Assembly: GCF_021869535.1 (NCBI RefSeq) | Contig: NW_026262723.1 | Span: forward strand, 77,066,001-77,130,000 | DNA length: 64,000 nt | Direction of reading: 5' to 3' | DNA from: Mytilus californianus | Lineage: Eukaryota | Shown: in pieces, positions 11,602 to 20,062 of the stretch | Numbering within the stretch: position 1 is the first letter of the stretch | Layout: every line of letters starts with the position of its first letter | Translations under genes and position numbers: made by a program | The notes under the pieces: model-generated | What the model was told of the DNA's origin: nothing | Database searches by the model: none | What the model saw: the letters and a program-made list of their open reading frames with translations, nothing else

Positions 11602-14600
11602 TTACTGGGCAGATTTCTCCTTTGGAAGCAGCTTATCAGAACTGTAAGCTCTATCCACCATGAAATCTATGACACGTTCTGGTAAAAAACTTCCCAGCCG
11701 AATCAAAAGCTGAAAGTATATACATGTATACAAAAAATTATTTTACTAAGAACATTAAAAAAAATACAATAATCAATCAGTAACATATACAATTATTTAA
11801 AATTAGAGTAAAAAAAATAAATTTCTTCCATCACTTTCTATTTATAGTGATTGTAGGACTGGTTAATACAAAACAATGTCAAACATTTAACCACTATTCA
11901 GATTTTTCAAACTACAAAACTGTTCCGATATCAAAATCCTAAAACTAAATTTAAAATACAAAAATATCAGTCATTAAATCATAACTGTTAAGGCCTAGAA
12001 AACTTAAACTAGACAATTTTGGAGTGGAATAGGTAAAAAGACTACATTAACCATAAATGTAGCTCCATAAAAGGGGGGGCTGGGCACCCTGGACCCCTAA
12101 ATCCGCCTTTTTACTATCTTTGATGGTTTCTATCGAAATTGTTTATGAATTGTCTTGACTTTGACATAATGGTATAGTGATTTGTCAATCATTAAATTCT
12201 TGATGGATGTTTAAGTTTGATTGTTTTACAGGGTTGGTGTCTCATTGAAATATACCCATTATCTTCTTACATTCATTTATTCAACAACATATTAATGTTA
12301 CTAGACCATGATTAAGGAGGAACACAAATTAACTCATAGAAACTGATAAATACTGATGATGATGCAACTGCTTACCAATATCATTGGATCAATATTTGTG
12401 GTACCTTTTAAACTTGACCTAATCACAAAATTTTAACAATTGTTGATACTCAAAATGCAACAAATTCAACATCTATGCTGCTGAAAATGTCAGAGTCAAA
12501 GTGATGCATACAAGTATGAATGGAAGTGGAAATTAAAACAAGCAATATAAAGTTACAATCAAAACATACAATAATATAAACAGATGGACAATAGGATTCC
12601 TACAAATTTGTTTTCAATTTCCATTGGCCAATAAAACAGACATGAATTTTGTTGTATTGTGTATACTGCCTGCAACACATATTTTTTATGAATGAACTAT
12701 TACTTACATTGTCTTGATCTACAAGGCTATTACTTCCATCTACAAGGTATCGTTGATTCGGGTTCTGAGATATAACAGCCATTTCTATAGTATTGACAAC
12801 TGGTGCTATAGAGTTACTGGACTTGGAAGAATAGTCTGCAATAGATTTGATCATCCCATCCATATAACTTCTACCATAAGTCTGTTTCACTGTCTGTGGA
12901 CTACTCTGCCACATCTTTTCTAATTCAGTCTCATATGTTGGAAGCTGTAATTCAAAAGTTTTACAGGATATGAAATGACTTTTCAAAAATATATTTTTAA
13001 TTCATCTAAAGTTTATAATACTGTTGTGATCTGTAAATTTGTATCACACATCTCTTTACATAACGTGGAATTTAAAGTTCATATAATTTTCTTCGGCTTT
13101 TGTTCAATAAACTTATTTTTTCTCTATCAAATTAAGCTCACATTTAAAAAGTTTCAAGTTCTGAGTACCTACAAATATAGCTAATTTGGTCAAATTGTAA
13201 ATGAGGAATTTTCTTCAAAAGTTAATTTCCAATGAGTGACAGAACTGCAGTAGGTATCAGGGGTGAAAATATTTTCCGGCAAACCTAATAATCAGGACTA
13301 TGTCATGATATTCAACCAAGCGGGGACAACCAAGAACCAAGACTAATATCTTAACCCTAAGAAAATTGAAGAAAACAAATTTTATATTTGTAAATTTTGT
13401 TCTTATAAATGTATAAATACATGCTGAGGGGGAAGGAGTATAACTATCCCAAATAGGCTTTAAATATGTGTGCTTGCTTTTCTTACTCATATTTTGTGTA
13501 CTCTCTGGAGGCATAATTGCAGGGCATTTTGTGCTAACTTACATGAAAGTTGCCATTTCTTAAAGTAAAGTAAAACAGAATATGATGCCATGTGCACACT
13601 TTTTCTTATCCAGGTTCAATTGAATTGTGAAATCAGAGTCAAAATCCTAATTTGCCATATTATTCAAAAATTTCACAACATAATGAATAAGTGTACTACT
13701 ATGTTGGTGTGACCACTACTTCATGGTAACCTCTCATAACCTAAAACTTTAACCTGATATGGGACAGATGAACCAATGCACAGACCAGAAAACATTATGC
13801 CCCCTTCTTTTCTAGGACAGAGTAAATTAAAATAGTAAAGAATGCAGGACACAGTAGTTTATGATGAAACTTGCATACAAGATTGAAAATCTTCAGTTCT
13901 ACAGTATAGAGGATTCTCATTTGAATGTCAAATAATTCAGATAAAATTAATGAGCAAAATTTTCCTACATAGAGCAATATTTACAAACCTTATTTTTACT
14001 AAGCATGGCAGTGGATCCTGTAAAATTACCAGGTTCTACAGTTATTACTTTCACACCAAATTTTTTCATCTCCATTCTGAGTGCATCAGTAAATCCTTCT
14101 TGTCCATATTTGGTCATACAGAATGCTGAATTACTGGGTATACCTATCCTTCCTTTATTACTGGTTACATTTACTATTCTACCTTTAAAATACATTTAGG
14201 ATGTATATCAAAAATTCTATTTTATATTGATCACGTTTTAAATATTAAACCATTTAGGGTTTTAGAAGTGTGATGAGTATCCATGAAACTAGGTTATCCT
14301 ATCCAAATGGATTGATTGCTGTTTAATGCCACTTTCAGCACTATTGTGCTATTTTGTGGCATCAGTTATTATTGGTGGAGATAGCCAGAGTGCCAGGAGA
14401 GAACCACGACCTTCGGAAGGAAAACTAACAATCCTAGTCAATTAAGACTGGAGTCCAATGCACCCCTATCCAAATTGATATGTGCTTGTCCTAAGTCTTG
14501 TATTTGTCTGTCAGGAGGTTTTTTTTTCTCTGTTGTCTATCCATCCATATGAGTTAGGAAATCTAATTTTTATACTATACTAATGGCCAACAAATGGTTG

Positions 14601-17600
14601 CATTCTTAGGTTGATATCTCATTGTTTATATTCACTATCAGTATCTCATTTTTATTCATATATTACCATATACCGGTACTAATACCATAATATTTTACAT
14701 AGGCCATGTACATTTATACCTCCATATAATGAAAAATTCATTTAAAAAACTCCATATCATTATATATTACCTTTGGATTTTCTAACCAAGGGTATAAATT
14801 TCTTTGTAACTCTGACTAAACCAAATAAATTAACTTCAGCAAGACGTCTATATTCATCCAGGGGAGAGAACTCAATATCTCCAACACCATACACAGCAGC
14901 ATTGTTTATCAAGGCCCATAATCCTGTAAGAGTACATCAGTCTTTATGTAATATAAATTATGGCACTATAAAATACAAAAGATTGTAGCAAAACATTACA
15001 ACAAAGAGAATTATAACATACTGTGGATTTATTATCATTAGTGGGATTTTGGGAAATGAAGAAATTAAATACATGTCAAATTTTGCTTTTTGTTGAATTT
15101 TATAGGAGAATGTGGTGATTGCATGATAATAAGATACACTAAAAATCACCAATTTTTCTCCAACAACAAAAAATGATACCAATGAAAATGAATTTTTTAT
15201 TTTACATCAAAACTTTAGCAAAATTCCAACTTTAACTTAAAGAAATTTTTTGTGACGAGTGAACCAACACCTTCTAACGGAAAAGCTGGTAGAGTAACCA
15301 AGATGGATACCGAAGTATGCTGCGGTTGTCTTAAAACCTCATGGAAATGTAATATGTAGAGACAACAACATCTGGGTTACCGCAAGGTGATAGTTTTATT
15401 GAGTTTTAAAGTTGTCAAATCAATTATTGTGACGTTACGTCTTGTTAACCTTTGTAACCCCATATGCACTGCATTTCATGTACTTCAGTATTTGTTTTCT
15501 ATGTTTAAATTGTCCTGAAGACGCCACCGTAAGTGGCGAAACATGTAGACTCAATAAAACTATCACCTTGCGGTAACCCAGATGTTGTTGTCTCTACATA
15601 TTACATTTCCATGAGGTTTTAAGACAACCGCAGCATACTTCGGTATCCATCTTGGTTACTCTACCAGCTTTTCCGTTAGAAGGTGTTGGTTCACTCGTCA
15701 CAAATCATTCATTTTTCTGTGAACCCCTGCATCCGCACACGATCCACCTTAGCCGTCCTGCGTTGTAGTTACAACCGTTAGCCTCATGTCTACCGACCAG
15801 TTCCATTCTACCACCAACCTCACTGAAGAAACCGCCCATACCTCGAAGAAAAGGAAAACCCGCGAAAAAGAAGACCACCGCAAAACGTACTGAACCGCAG
15901 AACCGCACGATTATTGTTGAAATAAACTTGCAACATGGATAGTGTACCACAACCGCAAAATGTAACCAATTCACCACAACTTCCACCATGCCCTACATGT
16001 GCGACTACCATACATCTTACAACATTCCCGACGCAATTGGAAGTAGTACCTCTTTCCGAGTGAAGCCTTTTGGAATGGTACGGAATGTCCTGTGAGGTGT
16101 TGTCCATTTTGGAAAAAACACTGACAATGCATTATTAACTTTTACTTTCACTTTCATTTTAAAGTTGTCAAATCAATTATTGTGACGTTACGTCTTGTTA
16201 ACCTTTGTAACCCCATATGCACCGCATTTCATGTACTTCAGTATTTGTTTTCTATGTTTAAATTGTCCTGAAGACGCCACCGTAAGTGGCGAAACATGTA
16301 GACTCAATAAAACTATCACCTTGCGGTAACCCAGATGTTGTTGTCTCTACATATTACATTTCCATGAGGTTTTAAGACAACCGCAGCATACTTCGGTATC
16401 CATCTTGGTTACTCTACCAGCTTTTCCGTTAGAAGGTGTTGGTTCACTCGTCACAAATCATTCATTTTTCTGTGAACCCCTGCATCCGCACACGATCCAC
16501 CTTAGCCGTCCTGCGTTGTAGTTACAACCGTTAGCCTCATGTCTACCGACCAGTTCCATTCTACCACCAACCTCACTGAAGAAACCGCCCATACCTCGAA
16601 GAAAAGGAAAACCCACGAAAAAGAAGACCACCGCAAAACTTACTGAACCGCAGAACCGCACGATTATTGTTGAAATAAACTTGCAACATGGATAGTGTAC
16701 CACAACCGCAAAATGTAACCAATTCACCACAACTTCCACCATGCCCTACATGTGCGACTACCATACATCTTACAACATTCCCGACGCAATTGGAAGTAGT
16801 ACCTCTTTCCGAGTGAAGCCTTTTGGAATGGTACGGAATGTCCTGTGAGGTGTTGTCCATTTTGGAAAAAACACTGACAATGCATTATTAACTTTTACTT
16901 TCACTTTCATTTTAAAGTTGTCAAATCAATTATTGTGACGTTACGTCTTGTTAACCTTTGTAACCCCATATGCACCGCATTTCATGTACTTCAGTATTTG
17001 TTTTCTATGTTTAAATTGTCCTGAAGACGCCACCGTAAGTGGCGAAACATGTAGACTCAATAAAACTATCACCTTGCGGTAACCCAGATGTTGTTGTCTC
17101 TACATATTACATTTCCATGAGGTTTTAAGACAACCGCAGCATACTTCGGTATCCATCTTGGTTACTCTACCAGCTTTTCCGTTAGAAGGTGTTGGTTCAC
17201 TCGTCACAAATCATTCATTTTTCTGTGAACCCCTGCATCCGCACACGATCCACCTTAGCCGTCCTGCGTTGTAGTTACAACCGTTAGCCTCATGTCTACC
17301 GACCAGTTCCATTCTACCACCAACCTCACTGAAGAAACCGCCCATACCTCGAAGAAAAGGAAAACCCACGAAAAAGAAGACCACCGCAAAACTTACTGAA
17401 CCGCAGAACCGCACGATTATTGTTGAAATAAACTTGCAACATGGATAGTGTACCACAACCGCAAAATGTAACCAATTCACCACAACTTCCACCATGCCCT
17501 ACATGTGCGACTACCATACATCTTACAACATTCCCGACGCAATTGGAAGTAGTACCTCTTTCCGAGTGAAGCCTTTTGGAATGGTACGGAATGTCCTGTG

Positions 17601-20062
17601 AGGTGTTGTCCATTTTGGAAAAAACACTGACAATGCATTATTAACTTTTACTTTCACTTTCATTTTAAAGTTGTCAAATCAATTATTGTGACGTTACGTC
17701 TTGTTAACCTTTGTAACCCCATATGCACCGCATTTCATGTACTTCAGTATTTGTTTTCTATGTTTAAATTGTCCTGAAGACGCCACCGTAAGTGGCGAAA
17801 CATGTAGACTCAATAAAACTATCACCTTGCGGTAACCCAGATGTTGTTGTCTCTACATATTACATTAAAGAAATTTTGTATAATTAAAAGAAGACTAAAC
17901 ATGGGATGCAAATTTTGTTAACAATTATTACTCAAGTTAGTTGCTGTTACAATTCCTTGTTCAGTGATATGTTGTAGTAGTCACAATTCCTTTTTTTAGT
18001 AAAAATCAAAATTTACAAAAATACACAAGCAGTAATTAGGCCAAAAAGAATCATGATCCAACCCTTTCCTTGAAGATGATATTATGATGGCTCTCCTGAT
18101 GAAATGTACATTTTCAAAATTAATTCAATATGCACATTTAAAAAATACAATGAAAGTATGTCATTAATTGGTGAAAACTTTGCCTTATTTAATCAGAGAT
18201 ATATAGTAATTTATTGAGACAGTATTAATCCACTTTATATAATACAGGAATTGTCCATTAATTATAACTGTTGGCTTAATAGACTGATTGATTATTATTT
18301 ATCATTGCATCTGAATTTTTTAAGAAATGTACACCAATTTGCTACATAAAATTTATAGTTTGTCAGACCAAAAACAGTTCTTATGTTTTCTTCAGTATTA
18401 AAATTCTGTTCAATTTTTTGTGGCAATGTCTTTCTGCTTCTGTTTATGATGCTGATATCAATTTTTCATATGTATATACCTTTATCTCTGACTTTCTTCT
18501 CTATCTCTGCAAAAGCTAGGTCAACAGAATTGTCATCTGTAATATCTAGCTTTATAATCTGTATACTACTGTACTCTGATCTAAGTTGACTGGCTCCTTT
18601 TCCATCAGGATTATAACATCCAGCAAATACAGACAGTCCTTCTCCTGATAAACGACGAGCCACAGCATTCCCAAACCCTTTTAGAGTAAACAAAAAACAA
18701 ATTTAAAATAACATTTTTCAATACTTAACAACCAAATACTGAAAGTTTTGGTTCTTAAGCAAGACATATTCCTATTCCAGCTGTAATGTTATTGTGATGT
18801 TGATTTAAATATATTACTGTCACATCTCAATGGACAAGGGATGCTAGTGTTAGGAGAGCATTGAGCTCAATTCACATTATAAAAGGCTAACAAAAATATA
18901 AAAAGAGATCTGCTAGGATCTGTTGGACCTATAGATTTCTGACACATACTGTCAAATCAAATGAGTTTTATTCCATCTACAGAATATTGAATACTACTTA
19001 TTAGAGAGGACATCAGTTGTTTATTTGGGTGTCTGCATGTGTGGATGGGGGATATATAGAAGCTATGTGTTTGATGTCTGTTTTGTCTGGAATGTTTAAT
19101 TGATGTAACCTGAAGAACTGTCATACAAATGGCAGATTTGTTGTTCTATGACCAGATATAACCCCCAAATCTCTCATAGAGAAAGTCCCTGTACCATTGC
19201 AAGAAAATGACAGTAATTTTTCAATATAGTTACATAGGTGGTGTGATGATTTGTTTTCCATTTTTATAAGTGATTGATGATTAATTTCATGACTCCACAT
19301 TTGAGTTAGTGTGTGGTAGGCTTATTTTACTAAACATGAAGAGGACAAATACATACAGTAAGTATCCTTTGAGTTTGATATAAATGTTATTTCTTATCAG
19401 TAACAGTTGCCATGTTGATTGGGCACAATATTAAGCCATTGATCATAATTCCATAAGAATTATTCTATTTAAATATGGTTCCAATCTACCTGATGTTTAC
19501 TTCAAATTGAAAAGTCAATAATCAGAGACTATGAATCCTTTATTCTGGCTTTACATGTGTTTTTACTCACTCTGAGTTTATTTTTAAATGCTTGCAATTT
19601 TTTGTCATTTTTAACAAGCATTTTCAAATGGTAAAAAATTAAATGTCACATTACAACATGTACAAAGCGATCCTACTTTCATTTCAGTTCAAAAAATAAA
19701 GGTATTATTTTGGACCTTATCACCACACTTCTCCTCCACATACAGTTGGAATACAAAATATCTTTTACTAATGCTAAATGTGATTCTTTATTTTGTTATA
19801 ATAATGAAAACACATTATCACCTGTATCACAACCAGTTATGAAGACATATTTTTCCTCTGTATTTATTCGTCTGAAGGTAAGTTTCTGATACACTACATT
19901 TAGTATAATGAGAAAAGCTACAAACAGTATAGTTTTGGCGATGAATGGTTGGACTACAATGAATGGGAGCACTGCCAATACTCCAAGATAAGTCAGTTCA
20001 AAAGCCTGGAATCCTATAAACTTCTTGATTCCCATTCCTAGGTAACTTCTTATGCTGTCCAT
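11602..20062 (-). CDS. Short-chain dehydrogenase/reductase of the BDH1 (D-beta-hydroxybutyrate dehydrogenase)/retinol dehydrogenase group, 376 aa, with an N-terminal hydrophobic anchor
   Basis: Exons (minus) 20062-19822, 18677-18480, 14923-14771, 14182-13989, 12944-12708 and 11709-11602 (TAA) total 1131 nt, in frame, all GT-AG. Motifs: TGCDTGFG, GLWALINNAA, EVNLFG, GRIVNVTS, FCMTKYG, VEPGNF. Poly(A) signal on the minus strand at about 11424-11429. An acceptor at 20087/20088 implies an upstream non-coding exon. Confidence 0.92.
14303..14470 (-). mobile_element. 3' part of a SINE-like dispersed repeat
   Basis: The sequence gattgattgctgtttaatgccactttcagcac...ggtggagatagccagagtgccaggagagaaccacgacc resembles the reverse complement of a common bivalve SINE body with a short (CAAT)n tail. 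Recognised from memory, not by search. Confidence 0.5.
15508..15555 (+). ncRNA. Minimal type I hammerhead ribozyme, copy 1 (predicted cleavage after A15547)
   Basis: GUC-CUGAAGA-C-GCCAC(CGUAA)GUGGC-GAAA-CAUGU-A^-GAC. It has the conserved CUGANGA and GAAA boxes, a 5-bp stem II, a palindromic ACAUGU stem III, a GUA cleavage triplet and a GUC/GAC stem I that can extend across a bulge. Confidence 0.85.
16261..16308 (+). ncRNA. Minimal type I hammerhead ribozyme, copy 2 (cleavage after 16300)
   Basis: Identical to copy 1, 753 nt downstream. Confidence 0.85.
17014..17061 (+). ncRNA. Minimal type I hammerhead ribozyme, copy 3 (cleavage after 17053)
   Basis: Identical to copy 1, 1506 nt downstream. 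Confidence 0.85.
17767..17814 (+). ncRNA. Minimal type I hammerhead ribozyme, copy 4 (cleavage after 17806)
   Basis: Identical to copy 1, 2259 nt downstream. The insertion ends 60 nt after this cleavage site. Confidence 0.85.

What the first reader, a model, noticed from the sequence alone, without database searches (positions are those of the whole stretch)
15237..17877. Tandem 753-nt hammerhead-ribozyme retroelement: predicted source of a self-cleaving, possibly circular RNA with cargo
Seen: four identical minimal type I hammerheads spaced exactly 753 nt apart, a 10-13-bp TSD, no poly(A) tail, no RT or endonuclease ORF, and almost no divergence between units. Established: such hammerheads with a palindromic stem III (here ACAUGU) occur in Penelope-like elements and animal retrozymes, can cleave as dimers, and tandem retrozymes yield circular RNAs. 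Inference: a plus-strand transcript would be cut into three 753-nt monomers that could circularise and be re-inserted by a Penelope-type RT in trans. The class is known. The unusual points are the large monomer (retrozymes I know of in animals are generally a few hundred nt), the structured leader and the ORF-bearing cargo, so this may be an undescribed viroid-like mobile RNA family.
Basis: partly seen in the sequence, partly recalled or inferred. Interest (0 to 1): 0.9.

Follow-up and report, generated by a model that had tools for sequence, protein, structure and literature searches.

The report
Ribozyme-bearing tandem Penelope-dependent retroelement
This is a young insertion of a non-coding, 753-base tandem repeat carrying Penelope-type minimal hammerhead ribozymes. 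It is a parasite of a Penelope-like retrotransposon in the same genome, so it is a well-preserved member of an already described class, not a new kind of mobile RNA.

Summary
Four identical hammerhead motifs lie exactly 753 nt apart, with a 13-bp target-site duplication, no poly(A), no RT/EN and near-identical units.

It is one of about 22 dispersed insertions (104 units, 97-100% identical) of a non-autonomous family. An intact Penelope-like element (PLE) in the same genome (3.9 kb, RT plus C-terminal GIY-YIG) has:
- the same ribozyme design, including the unpaired base after A9;
- collinear 64-82% similarity to both unit termini;
- the same two alternative 3' ends, about +60 and +157-165 after the cut site.

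The "structured leader" is the inverted 5'-truncated arm typical of PLE insertions. Of 13 two-armed loci, 12 pair one short with one long ("tail") end.

The "cargo" has no protein match, and its ORFs are not conserved in sister subfamilies. The unit RNA folds no better than shuffled sequence. A 753-nt unit lies inside the published retrozyme range of 51-972 bp.

RNA-seq shows low-level transcripts and unit-to-unit joints, but no pile of ends at the cut site. Self-cleavage and circles therefore remain inferred.

Verdict: a new member of a known kind (non-LTR retrozyme / non-autonomous PLE). First-stage notes on other DNA of this genome flagged similar arrays.

The parts
15237..15249 (.). Left copy of the 13-bp target-site duplication TTAAAGAAATTTT
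   Evidence: (D4). 9 of 10 family loci examined have comparable 9-15 bp duplications.
15250..15404 (-). Inverted, 5'-truncated arm: unit positions 2-157 on the minus strand. Its outer (3') end is the 'long/tail' terminus at about +157. Its inner end lies 1 nt from the ribozyme cut site.
   Evidence: (I1-I3). 100% identical to the unit and carries the locus-specific variant 57C.
15404..15547 (+). 5'-truncated first unit of the plus arm (unit positions 610-753), containing hammerhead 1 (15512-15550)
   Evidence: The junction with the inverted arm shares 1 nt.
15548..16300 (+). Full 753-nt unit 1, cut site to cut site, with hammerhead 2 at 16265-16303
16301..17053 (+). Full 753-nt unit 2, with hammerhead 3 at 17018-17056
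17054..17806 (+). Full 753-nt unit 3, with hammerhead 4 at 17771-17809
17807..17866 (+). Terminal partial unit (positions 1-60), ending at the 'short' 3' terminus. No poly(A). 2-nt microhomology with the target.
   Evidence: The same +56-61 terminus occurs in 15 other arm ends across 15 other loci.
17865..17877 (.). Right copy of the target-site duplication
15733..16139 (+). Non-PLE middle segment ('cargo', unit positions ~186-592), repeated in each unit. It holds only short ORFs, none conserved.
   Evidence: No similarity to PLE ORFs and no Pfam family. The ATGs and frames are lost in subfamilies A and B.

Best explanation
Window 15250-17866 is one retrotransposition event of a non-autonomous derivative of a Penelope-like element (PLE). 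Equivalently, it is a non-LTR 'retrozyme' that carries the PLE-type minimal hammerhead.

Each 753-nt unit keeps only the PLE's terminal, pLTR-like regions: about 190 nt after the ribozyme cut site and about 160 nt before it. About 400 nt of unrelated non-coding sequence replaces the PLE's ORFs.

Proposed mechanism:
1. A more-than-unit RNA is the template. It is either an uncleaved or partly cleaved multimeric transcript, or a circle copied round and round.
2. The RT/GIY-YIG protein of a co-resident autonomous PLE copies it in trans by target-primed reverse transcription at a staggered nick. This step gives the 13-bp duplication.
3. Both exposed DNA 3' ends prime on the RNA, one at about +60 and the other at about +157. 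This gives two head-to-head arms whose inner ends are joined by microhomology.

Shown here: the anatomy, the dispersal with target-site duplications, the shared termini and ribozyme design with the PLE, the absence of coding capacity, and low-level transcription.

Inferred: trans-mobilisation by this particular PLE, ribozyme self-cleavage as a dimer through the palindromic ACAUGU, circularisation, and rolling-circle copying.
For: 1. Family and dispersal. There are 104 ribozyme-plus-junction sites in about 22 loci, all at 753 spacing, and units are 97-100% identical. 9 of 10 loci examined have 9-15 bp target-site duplications at unrelated AT-rich sites.
2. Autonomous relative. A 3927-bp tandem PLE has ORF2 = RVT_1 plus C-terminal GIY-YIG, with many intact copies. 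Its ribozyme is CTGATGA-C-GGTGCC-CTA-GGCACC-GAAAC-ATGT-C, the same design as here. It is collinear with unit positions 31-185 (64%), 593-631 (82%) and 688-752 (69%).
3. Same two 3' termini. The element ends at +56-61 or +156-169. The PLE ends at +57-62 (five copies; a sixth, scored at +68, is not counted) or +159-167 (three copies). 12 of 13 two-armed retrozyme loci, and both PLE head-to-head pairs, combine one short and one long end. With equal use of the two ends, 12 or more of 13 has P = 0.0017.
4. Both arms of a locus share locus-specific variants, so they come from one RNA species.
5. The ribozyme meets the published min-HHR criteria (PMC4209133): an unpaired base between A9 and G10.1, a G10.1-C11.1 pair, palindromic helix III, and genome-wide families with compensatory stem II changes. 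The ribozyme is 100% conserved in subfamilies that are only 79-86% identical overall.
6. The tandem plus inverted plus one-sided 'tail' architecture is the published PLE hallmark (PMC8557442). Derivation of retrozymes from pLTRs has been published for Xenopus.
7. RNA-seq reads and contigs from 4 runs cover the unit and cross the unit boundary.
Against: - The PLE found is only 64-82% similar at the termini, so it may be a cousin of the true mobiliser.
- No experiment or read pile shows cleavage at GUA^G. Multi-unit insertions mean most ribozyme sites in the template were uncut or religated.
- Published PLE min-HHRs cleave poorly in vitro.
- Rfam models do not detect the motif.
- The unit RNA is not more structured than shuffles, unlike described retrozyme circRNAs.
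- Variants shared by only some adjacent units (window units 2 and 3; four other loci) do not fit copying of a single monomeric circle, unless later unequal exchange is added.
Confidence: 0.85

Rival explanations
1. Rolling-circle version. The ribozymes cut the transcript into 753-nt monomers, a host ligase circularises them, and the PLE RT copies the circle many times. This would generate the tandem units directly. It is the first reader's model and the one proposed by Cervera & de la Pena in 2014.
For: - Arrays reach 14 units per arm, and both arms are multi-unit.
- Both arms have variable inner ends, as expected for a template without ends.
- All units of a locus share locus-specific variants.
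- The autonomous PLE itself forms arrays of at least 5 units.
- The model is published and is invoked for retrozymes.
- 'Goes back 753' joints appear in RNA libraries.
Against: - The joints are equally expected from tandem DNA or read-through RNA.
- There is no pile of ends at the cut site, though depth there is only 1-3 reads.
- Variants shared by subsets of adjacent units in 5 of 10 loci, and an 1853-nt higher-order period at C1:50.03 Mb, require multimeric circles or later exchange.
- The unit is not highly self-paired.
- Min-HHRs are weak in vitro.
Confidence: 0.4
2. Linear-multimer version. Read-through transcripts of existing arrays, with the ribozymes largely inactive, are the templates. 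Array length then changes afterwards by unequal crossing-over. In this version the hammerhead is kept for another role, such as RT recognition or 3'-end definition, or is simply hitch-hiking.
For: - Ribozyme sites inside the insertions were evidently intact in the template.
- Some variants are shared only by adjacent units, and there is a higher-order repeat.
- Published in-vitro activity of PLE min-HHRs is low.
- A possible competing helix forms between UAUGUUU upstream and AAACAUG of the core in the MFE fold.
- Only 1 of about 25 inner arm ends lies at the cut site.
Against: - The ribozyme is perfectly conserved across subfamilies that differ by 14-21% elsewhere.
- Stem II changes across families are compensatory, which argues for selection on the RNA fold.
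- Daughters of linear templates should be no longer than their parents, which makes 14-unit arms harder to reach.
Confidence: 0.35
3. The array is only a pLTR or truncated remnant of an ordinary full-length Penelope element.
For: The termini are homologous to the pLTR-like region of a full-length PLE. PLE insertions are often heavily 5'-truncated.
Against: - All 104 sites carrying this ribozyme and junction are 753 nt (or a deletion variant) apart. None flanks an ORF.
- The middle 400 nt match nothing in the PLE at DNA or protein level.
- Identity to the PLE termini is 64-82%, against 97-100% within the family.
Confidence: 0.03
4. An ordinary satellite amplified purely at the DNA level, with a chance hammerhead-like motif.
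For: It is tandem and near-identical, and some arrays reach a combined 26 units across the two arms.
Against: - The loci are dispersed on many chromosomes, each with its own target-site duplication and defined termini.
- The head-to-head architecture is shared with an RT-encoding element.
- The motif occurs 545 times against 6 in the control, with covariation.
Confidence: 0.02

Closest known systems
Metazoan non-LTR retrozymes (Cervera & de la Pena 2020, PMC7229834; Li, Clavereau & Pollet 2026, bioRxiv 10.64898/2026.07.22.740005)
   Same: - Non-coding tandem repeats, each unit with a type I hammerhead.
- Dispersed with target-site duplications, co-resident with PLEs, and related to PLE pLTRs.
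- Unit length inside the reported 51-972 bp range.
   Different: - It carries the PLE-type minimal hammerhead (2-bp palindromic helix III, extra base after A9), not the classical type I motif with loop-loop contacts described for invertebrate retrozymes.
- Invertebrate examples are 170-400 nt.
- The RNA is not predicted to be highly self-paired.
- Abundant circRNA is not shown here.
- The same genome also holds a classical-motif array with a period of about 540 nt.
Penelope-like elements with C-terminal GIY-YIG endonuclease and min-HHR in the pLTR (Cervera & de la Pena 2014, PMC4209133; Craig et al. 2021, PMC8557442)
   Same: - Ribozyme design.
- Tandem plus inverted 5'-truncated insertion architecture, with a one-sided 'tail' extension.
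- Short target-site duplications and no poly(A).
- Termini homologous to a resident PLE, with identical positions of the two 3' ends.
   Different: - No RT/EN and no ORF at all, and only 753 nt per unit.
- The tail here is about 100 nt, against the 30-40 bp usually quoted.
Non-autonomous PLE derivatives such as MRC1 of Chlamydomonas (Chlamys clade; described in PMC8557442)
   Same: Short non-coding elements that share 3' ends with autonomous PLEs and insert as multicopy head-to-tail arrays.
   Different: Different PLE clade and kingdom. Chlamys elements mostly lack canonical hammerheads.
Plant LTR retrozymes (Cervera et al. 2016, PMC4918200)
   Same: Non-autonomous and hammerhead-flanked, with a similar RNA size (600-1000 nt) and non-coding cargo.
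   Different: The plant elements have type III hammerheads in true LTRs and are mobilised by Gypsy LTR retrotransposons. They are not tandem and have no inverted arm.

Membership tests
PLE minimal hammerhead (min-HHR, PMC4209133) | Conserved core boxes CUGANGA ... GAAA, with an H (not G) before the cut | tested here: met
   CUGAAGA ... GAAAC-AUGU-A^G at four sites. The triplet before the cut is GUA.
PLE minimal hammerhead (min-HHR, PMC4209133) | Unpaired nucleotide between A9 and G10.1, and a G10.1-C11.1 pair | tested here: met
   There is an extra C after CUGAAGA. Stem II is GCCAC/GUGGC, opening with a G-C pair. The resident PLE has the same arrangement, and the criteria are quoted.
PLE minimal hammerhead (min-HHR, PMC4209133) | Very short, palindromic helix III/loop 3, allowing a dimeric active form | tested here: met
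   ACAUGU is a 6-nt palindrome, so a monomer would have 2 bp closing a 2-nt loop. The MFE cofold does not itself recover the dimeric hammerhead fold, so dimer formation is inferred.
PLE minimal hammerhead (min-HHR, PMC4209133) | Consensus families with compensatory changes in the helices | tested here: met
   Read by eye from the lists. Stem II variants include GCCAC/GUGGC, GGUGCC/GGCACC, GCCGAU/AUCGGC, ACUGAU/AUCAGU and GCCUGU/GCAGGC. Helix I pair 1.3-2.3 is C-G here and U-A in the PLE. No formal covariation statistic was run.
PLE minimal hammerhead (min-HHR, PMC4209133) | Self-cleavage activity | not testable with these tools
   RNA-seq depth at the site was 1-3 reads and showed no pile of ends.
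Rfam hammerhead families | Match to a curated covariance model | tested here: not met
   cmscan at E<=1 over 14000-19000 gave no hammerhead hit. This is expected for a motif that lacks a closed helix III.
Non-LTR retrozyme (PMC7229834) | Tandem genomic repeats, each with a type I hammerhead and without coding capacity | tested here: met
Non-LTR retrozyme (PMC7229834) | Expressed as linear and circular monomer RNAs | tested here: inconclusive
   47 reads in 10.3 million raw RNA reads. Unit-boundary joints appear in 4 runs, but they cannot distinguish circles from tandem copies. No pile of ends at the cut.
Non-LTR retrozyme (PMC7229834) | Highly self-paired monomer RNA | tested here: not met
   MFE is -146.1 kcal/mol against -150.9 +/- 6.9 for shuffles; z = +0.69. 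The fold was computed on the linear form.
Non-autonomous Penelope-like element | Termini homologous to an autonomous PLE of the same genome | tested here: met
   Collinear 64-82% matches at both ends, and the same two 3'-end positions.
Non-autonomous Penelope-like element | PLE-type insertion: partial tandem, adjacent inverted 5'-truncated copy, one-sided tail, short target-site duplication, no poly(A) | tested here: met
   The architecture is as described in PMC8557442.
Non-autonomous Penelope-like element | Mobilised in trans by PLE RT/EN | not testable with these tools
   Inferred from the shared termini only.

The most novel reading that the evidence does not exclude
The strict pairing of one 'short' (+60) with one 'long' (+157) outer end, shared by the parasite and its PLE, may be the footprint of an integration complex in which the two target DNA ends prime at two fixed sites about 100 nt apart. 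Those sites would flank a conserved hairpin just downstream of the ribozyme. The template would be a circular or ribozyme-dimerised RNA, so the tandem units would be made by rolling-circle reverse transcription of a 753-nt circRNA. If so, this young, low-copy family would be a tractable system for the unsolved PLE integration mechanism and the origin of the 'tail'.
Probability: 0.2. Interest if true: 0.6.

Novelty: new member of a known kind. Interest (0 to 1): 0.3.

Why it matters
This is a clean invertebrate example of a link so far demonstrated only in Xenopus. A tandem hammerhead 'retrozyme' shares its ribozyme design, terminal sequences and both alternative 3' ends with an intact Penelope-like element of the same genome.

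The family is very young (about 22 loci, about 1% divergence), and every insertion still has its target-site duplication and both arm ends. That makes it a convenient natural data set for asking how PLEs build tandem and inverted insertions and the one-sided 'tail', and whether the minimal hammerhead is actually used.

It does not reveal a new class of mobile RNA.

Tried and rejected
1. Tandem Repeats Finder found nothing, because its longest period is 500. The repeat finder gave the 753 period instead.
2. Rfam gave only a weak MIR4372 'hit' (E = 0.046, far below gathering). It is produced by the inverted arm pairing with unit 1 and is an artefact.
3. BLASTN with default scoring found no similarity between the unit and the PLE loci. 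Scoring of 1/-1 against the single PLE unit revealed the collinear terminal matches. The same scoring against all PLE loci at E<=1e-3 listed nothing.
4. 'The inverted arm stops at the ribozyme cut because RT ran off a cleaved RNA.' This is true for this copy (position 2). Among about 25 inner arm ends in 16 loci it is the only one near the cut; the others range from 36 to 678. The chance of one such case is about 0.2, so it is not general evidence for cleavage.
5. A snap-back (hairpin) origin of the inverted arm is rejected. The arms are not mirror images, the long-end arm here is 156 nt against 2463 nt for the short-end arm, and the long end contains sequence absent from the other arm's end.
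6. Cargo as a remnant of PLE ORFs: the unit's first ATG (position 239) sits almost where the PLE ORF1 ATG sits (246). However, tblastn gives nothing better than E = 0.7, and this segment is the least conserved part in the subfamilies (35-58%).
8. RNAcofold of two ribozyme segments did not return the textbook dimeric hammerhead. Energy models do not score the core, so this is uninformative.

Full report
**1. Observation**

- The motif CTGAAGA-C-GCCAC-CGTAA-GTGGC-GAAAC-ATGT-A begins at 15515, 16268, 17021 and 17774, exactly 753 nt apart. The predicted cut falls after 15547, 16300, 17053 and 17806.
- Three complete units (15548-16300, 16301-17053, 17054-17806) differ at only two positions. Units 2 and 3 are identical.
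- The whole block is bracketed by a perfect 13-bp direct repeat, TTAAAGAAATTTT (15237-15249 and 17865-17877).
- There is no poly(A). There is also no similarity to RT or endonuclease.
- Tandem Repeats Finder missed the array only because its period limit is 500.
- Rfam's hammerhead models do not report the motif at E<=1. The single weak miRNA-family hit there is an artefact of the inverted repeat.

**2. Anatomy of the insertion**

The block consists of two arms placed head to head.
- The minus-strand arm (15250-15404) is unit positions 2-157.
- The plus-strand arm (15404-17866) is unit positions 610-753, three full units, and positions 1-60.

Both outer ends are therefore element 3' ends, one at +157 and one at +60 after the cut site. 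Each shares 2-3 nt of microhomology with the target.

**3. The family**

- The assembly is 1.65 Gb with about 31% GC. RNA libraries labelled as mollusc hold the sequence, so the source is probably a mollusc. Organism names are coded.
- The exact ribozyme plus its downstream junction occurs 104 times in about 22 loci on many chromosomes. The spacing is always 753 nt or a deletion variant, and never kb-scale spacing that could hold an ORF.
- Units are 97-100% identical.
- I rebuilt ten loci. Nine have their own 9-15 bp target-site duplication in AT-rich DNA.
- Seven of the ten, and 13 of the 16 loci resolved, have the same two-armed head-to-head form. The inner breakpoints vary (2, 36, 53, 84, 102, 118, 164 ... 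678).
- The outer ends do not vary: they fall at +56-61 or +156-169. In 12 of the 13 two-armed loci one end is short and the other long. With equal use of the two ends, 12 or more of 13 has P = 0.0017.
- Locus-specific substitutions are shared by all units of both arms, for example 320T and an inserted A after 613 at C121:48.0 Mb, 683C at C57, and five variants in the window copy. Each insertion therefore comes from one RNA species.
- Some variants are shared only by adjacent units. One locus has an 1853-nt higher-order period, made of a 347-nt deletion unit plus two full units.

**4. The autonomous relative**

A GIY-YIG scan of the genome found many Penelope-like elements. One family forms 3927-bp tandem units. 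It has three ORFs:
- ORF1, 182 aa.
- ORF2, 749 aa, with RVT_1 plus a C-terminal GIY-YIG domain.
- ORF3, 215 aa, a C2H2 zinc-finger protein.

Three features link this family to the 753-nt unit.
- Its ribozyme, CTGATGA-C-GGTGCC-CTA-GGCACC-GAAAC-ATGT-C^GAT, has the same design as the one here. That includes the extra C after A9, the ACAUGU palindrome and an AAUAAA just after the cut.
- With scoring suited to diverged DNA, the 753-nt unit is collinear with this PLE at unit 31-185 (64%), 593-631 (82%) and 688-752 (69%). Nothing in between matches.
- The PLE's own insertions end at +57-62 (five copies; a sixth, scored at +68, is not counted) or +159-167 (three copies). Its two head-to-head pairs again combine a short with a long end.

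The parasite and the PLE thus share ribozyme type, terminal sequence blocks and both priming sites. This is the strongest evidence available here that a PLE of this lineage mobilises the element. The 64-82% identity means the true partner may be a closer relative.

**5. Is the hammerhead real?**

It fits all four non-imposed criteria that Cervera & de la Pena (2014, PMC4209133) gave for metazoan PLE min-HHRs:
- an unpaired base between positions 9 and 10.1;
- a G10.1-C11.1 pair;
- a palindromic 15.2-16.2/loop 3;
- families with compensatory changes.

Genome-wide, the pattern CTGANGAC-N11-19-GAAACATGT occurs 545 times against 6 for the reversed control. Stem II differs between families by double, pair-preserving changes: GCCAC/GUGGC, GGUGCC/GGCACC, GCCGAU/AUCGGC, ACUGAU/AUCAGU and GCCUGU/GCAGGC (read by eye). 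Helix I pair 1.3-2.3 is C-G here and U-A in the PLE.

Two sister subfamilies are 86% and 79% identical overall. In both, the last 45 nt (the ribozyme) are 100% conserved. The fold is therefore under selection.

Activity is another matter. The same paper reports low in-vitro cleavage for such motifs, and only as dimers or trimers.

**6. The 'cargo'**

- Unit positions ~186-592 match nothing in the PLE at DNA or protein level.
- The plus-strand ORFs are 32-42 aa and the minus-strand ORFs are 94-95 aa. None hits Pfam above noise.
- Positions 200-320, which hold the first ATG, are the least conserved part of the unit (35-58%). The second ORF's ATG is lost in subfamily B.
- Subfamily A is a mosaic: 98-100% identical to this family over 350-753 but 38-85% over 1-350. 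That points to recombination or template switching between families.

I see no evidence that the cargo codes for anything.

**7. RNA**

- The 753-nt RNA is not unusually structured. The MFE is -146.1 kcal/mol against -150.9 +/- 6.9 for shuffles (z = +0.69). Described retrozyme circRNAs, in contrast, are highly self-paired.
- I laid one permuted monomer (15925-16677) on four runs.
- A raw-read RNA-seq run of the coded host organism gave 47 reads out of 10.3 million. Most were in the orientation expected for plus-sense RNA if the library is of the usual stranded type. About half came from a slightly different subfamily.
- Reads or contigs in all four runs cross the unit boundary ('goes back 753').
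- No pile of molecule ends appears at 16300/16301, but depth there is only 1-3 reads.
- Loose ends just past the cut are the downstream sequences of subfamilies A and B, which share the ribozyme.

The family is therefore transcribed at a low level. Cleavage and circularity are neither shown nor excluded.

**8. Mechanism**

Best supported: a more-than-unit RNA is copied by a PLE RT/EN in trans. Both staggered target 3' ends prime, one at about +60 and one at about +157. The two cDNAs are then joined at variable inner points by microhomology. The short site lies at the apex of a hairpin predicted in both the element and the PLE. That hairpin is not statistically distinguished from shuffles.

Whether the template is a circle copied round and round or a linear multimer remains open.

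A snap-back origin of the inverted arm is rejected because the arms are not mirror images. The near-coincidence of the window's inverted arm with the cut site is unique among about 25 arm ends, so it cannot carry the weight placed on it in a sibling note.

**9. Comparison with what is known, and novelty**

- Tandem hammerhead repeats mobilised by PLEs are the 'non-LTR retrozymes' (PMC7229834).
- Their derivation from PLE pLTRs, and consensus lengths of 51-972 bp, have been reported (bioRxiv 10.64898/2026.07.22.740005).
- The tandem, inverted and 'tail' architecture of PLE insertions is textbook for the group (PMC8557442).
- Circular templates for more-than-unit copies were proposed in 2014.

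What this locus adds is a particularly clean, young invertebrate case. The non-autonomous element carries the PLE-type minimal ribozyme rather than the classical type I motif, which also exists in this genome as a ~540-nt array. It also shares both 3' termini with an intact PLE, with a ~100-nt tail and a near-obligate short-plus-long pairing of ends.

That makes it a new member of a known kind, of moderate use to transposon specialists. It is not a new viroid-like family.

First-stage notes on other pieces of this genome (s1-274892, s1-274945) flagged similar arrays. They are unverified, apart from the ~540-nt array I saw myself.

Noticed in passing
L043:4013-4660 (minus strand): The autonomous PLE family carries a third ORF of 215 aa, overlapping the end of the RT-EN ORF. 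It has C2H2/BED-type zinc fingers (Pfam zf-C2H2, E = 1e-6). This is an unusual accessory gene for a Penelope-like element.
   Followed up: partly
L048:472-3710 (plus strand): A separate tandem array with a period of about 540 nt. Each unit carries a classical-looking type I hammerhead (CTGAAGAG-ACATTAATTGTC-GAAAT-CCGG...). The genome therefore holds both classical retrozymes and the min-HHR type studied here. The same motif appears in flanks of L035 and L039.
   Followed up: no
G000:C1:50031489-50035683 (loci L019-L023): A family insertion with an 1853-nt higher-order period: a 347-nt unit lacking positions 142-547 plus two full units, repeated at least twice with its own diagnostic variants. 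This fits a trimeric template or a later segmental duplication.
   Followed up: partly
window 15553-15558, and equivalents in subfamilies A and B (L052-L055) and the PLE (L043): An AAUAAA hexamer 5-12 nt after the predicted ribozyme cut is kept in all four element families, although the surrounding ~30 nt are the most variable part of the terminus. Its role is unknown; it could be a poly(A) signal or part of helix I/loop 1.
   Followed up: no
L052/L053 (G000:C1:37418932-37422721): Subfamily A is a mosaic of this family. Unit positions ~350-753 are 98-100% identical, while positions 1-350 are only 38-85% identical. This suggests recent recombination or RT template switching between retrozyme families.
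   Followed up: partly
window 15499-15546 (and each unit): In MFE folds, UAUGUUU about 30 nt upstream of the ribozyme pairs with AAACAUG of the core and helix III. This possible competing helix would keep a monomer inactive.
   Followed up: no
G000:C13:30174944-30194531 and G000:C91:5956843-5968583: These are the largest arrays of the family, with 14 + 12 and 13 + 3 units. Both are again head-to-head. Neither was fetched.
   Followed up: no
window 15373-15580 (minus strand): A weak Rfam MIR4372 match (29 bits against a gathering score of 100) is caused by the inverted arm pairing with unit 1. It is not a miRNA gene.
   Followed up: yes
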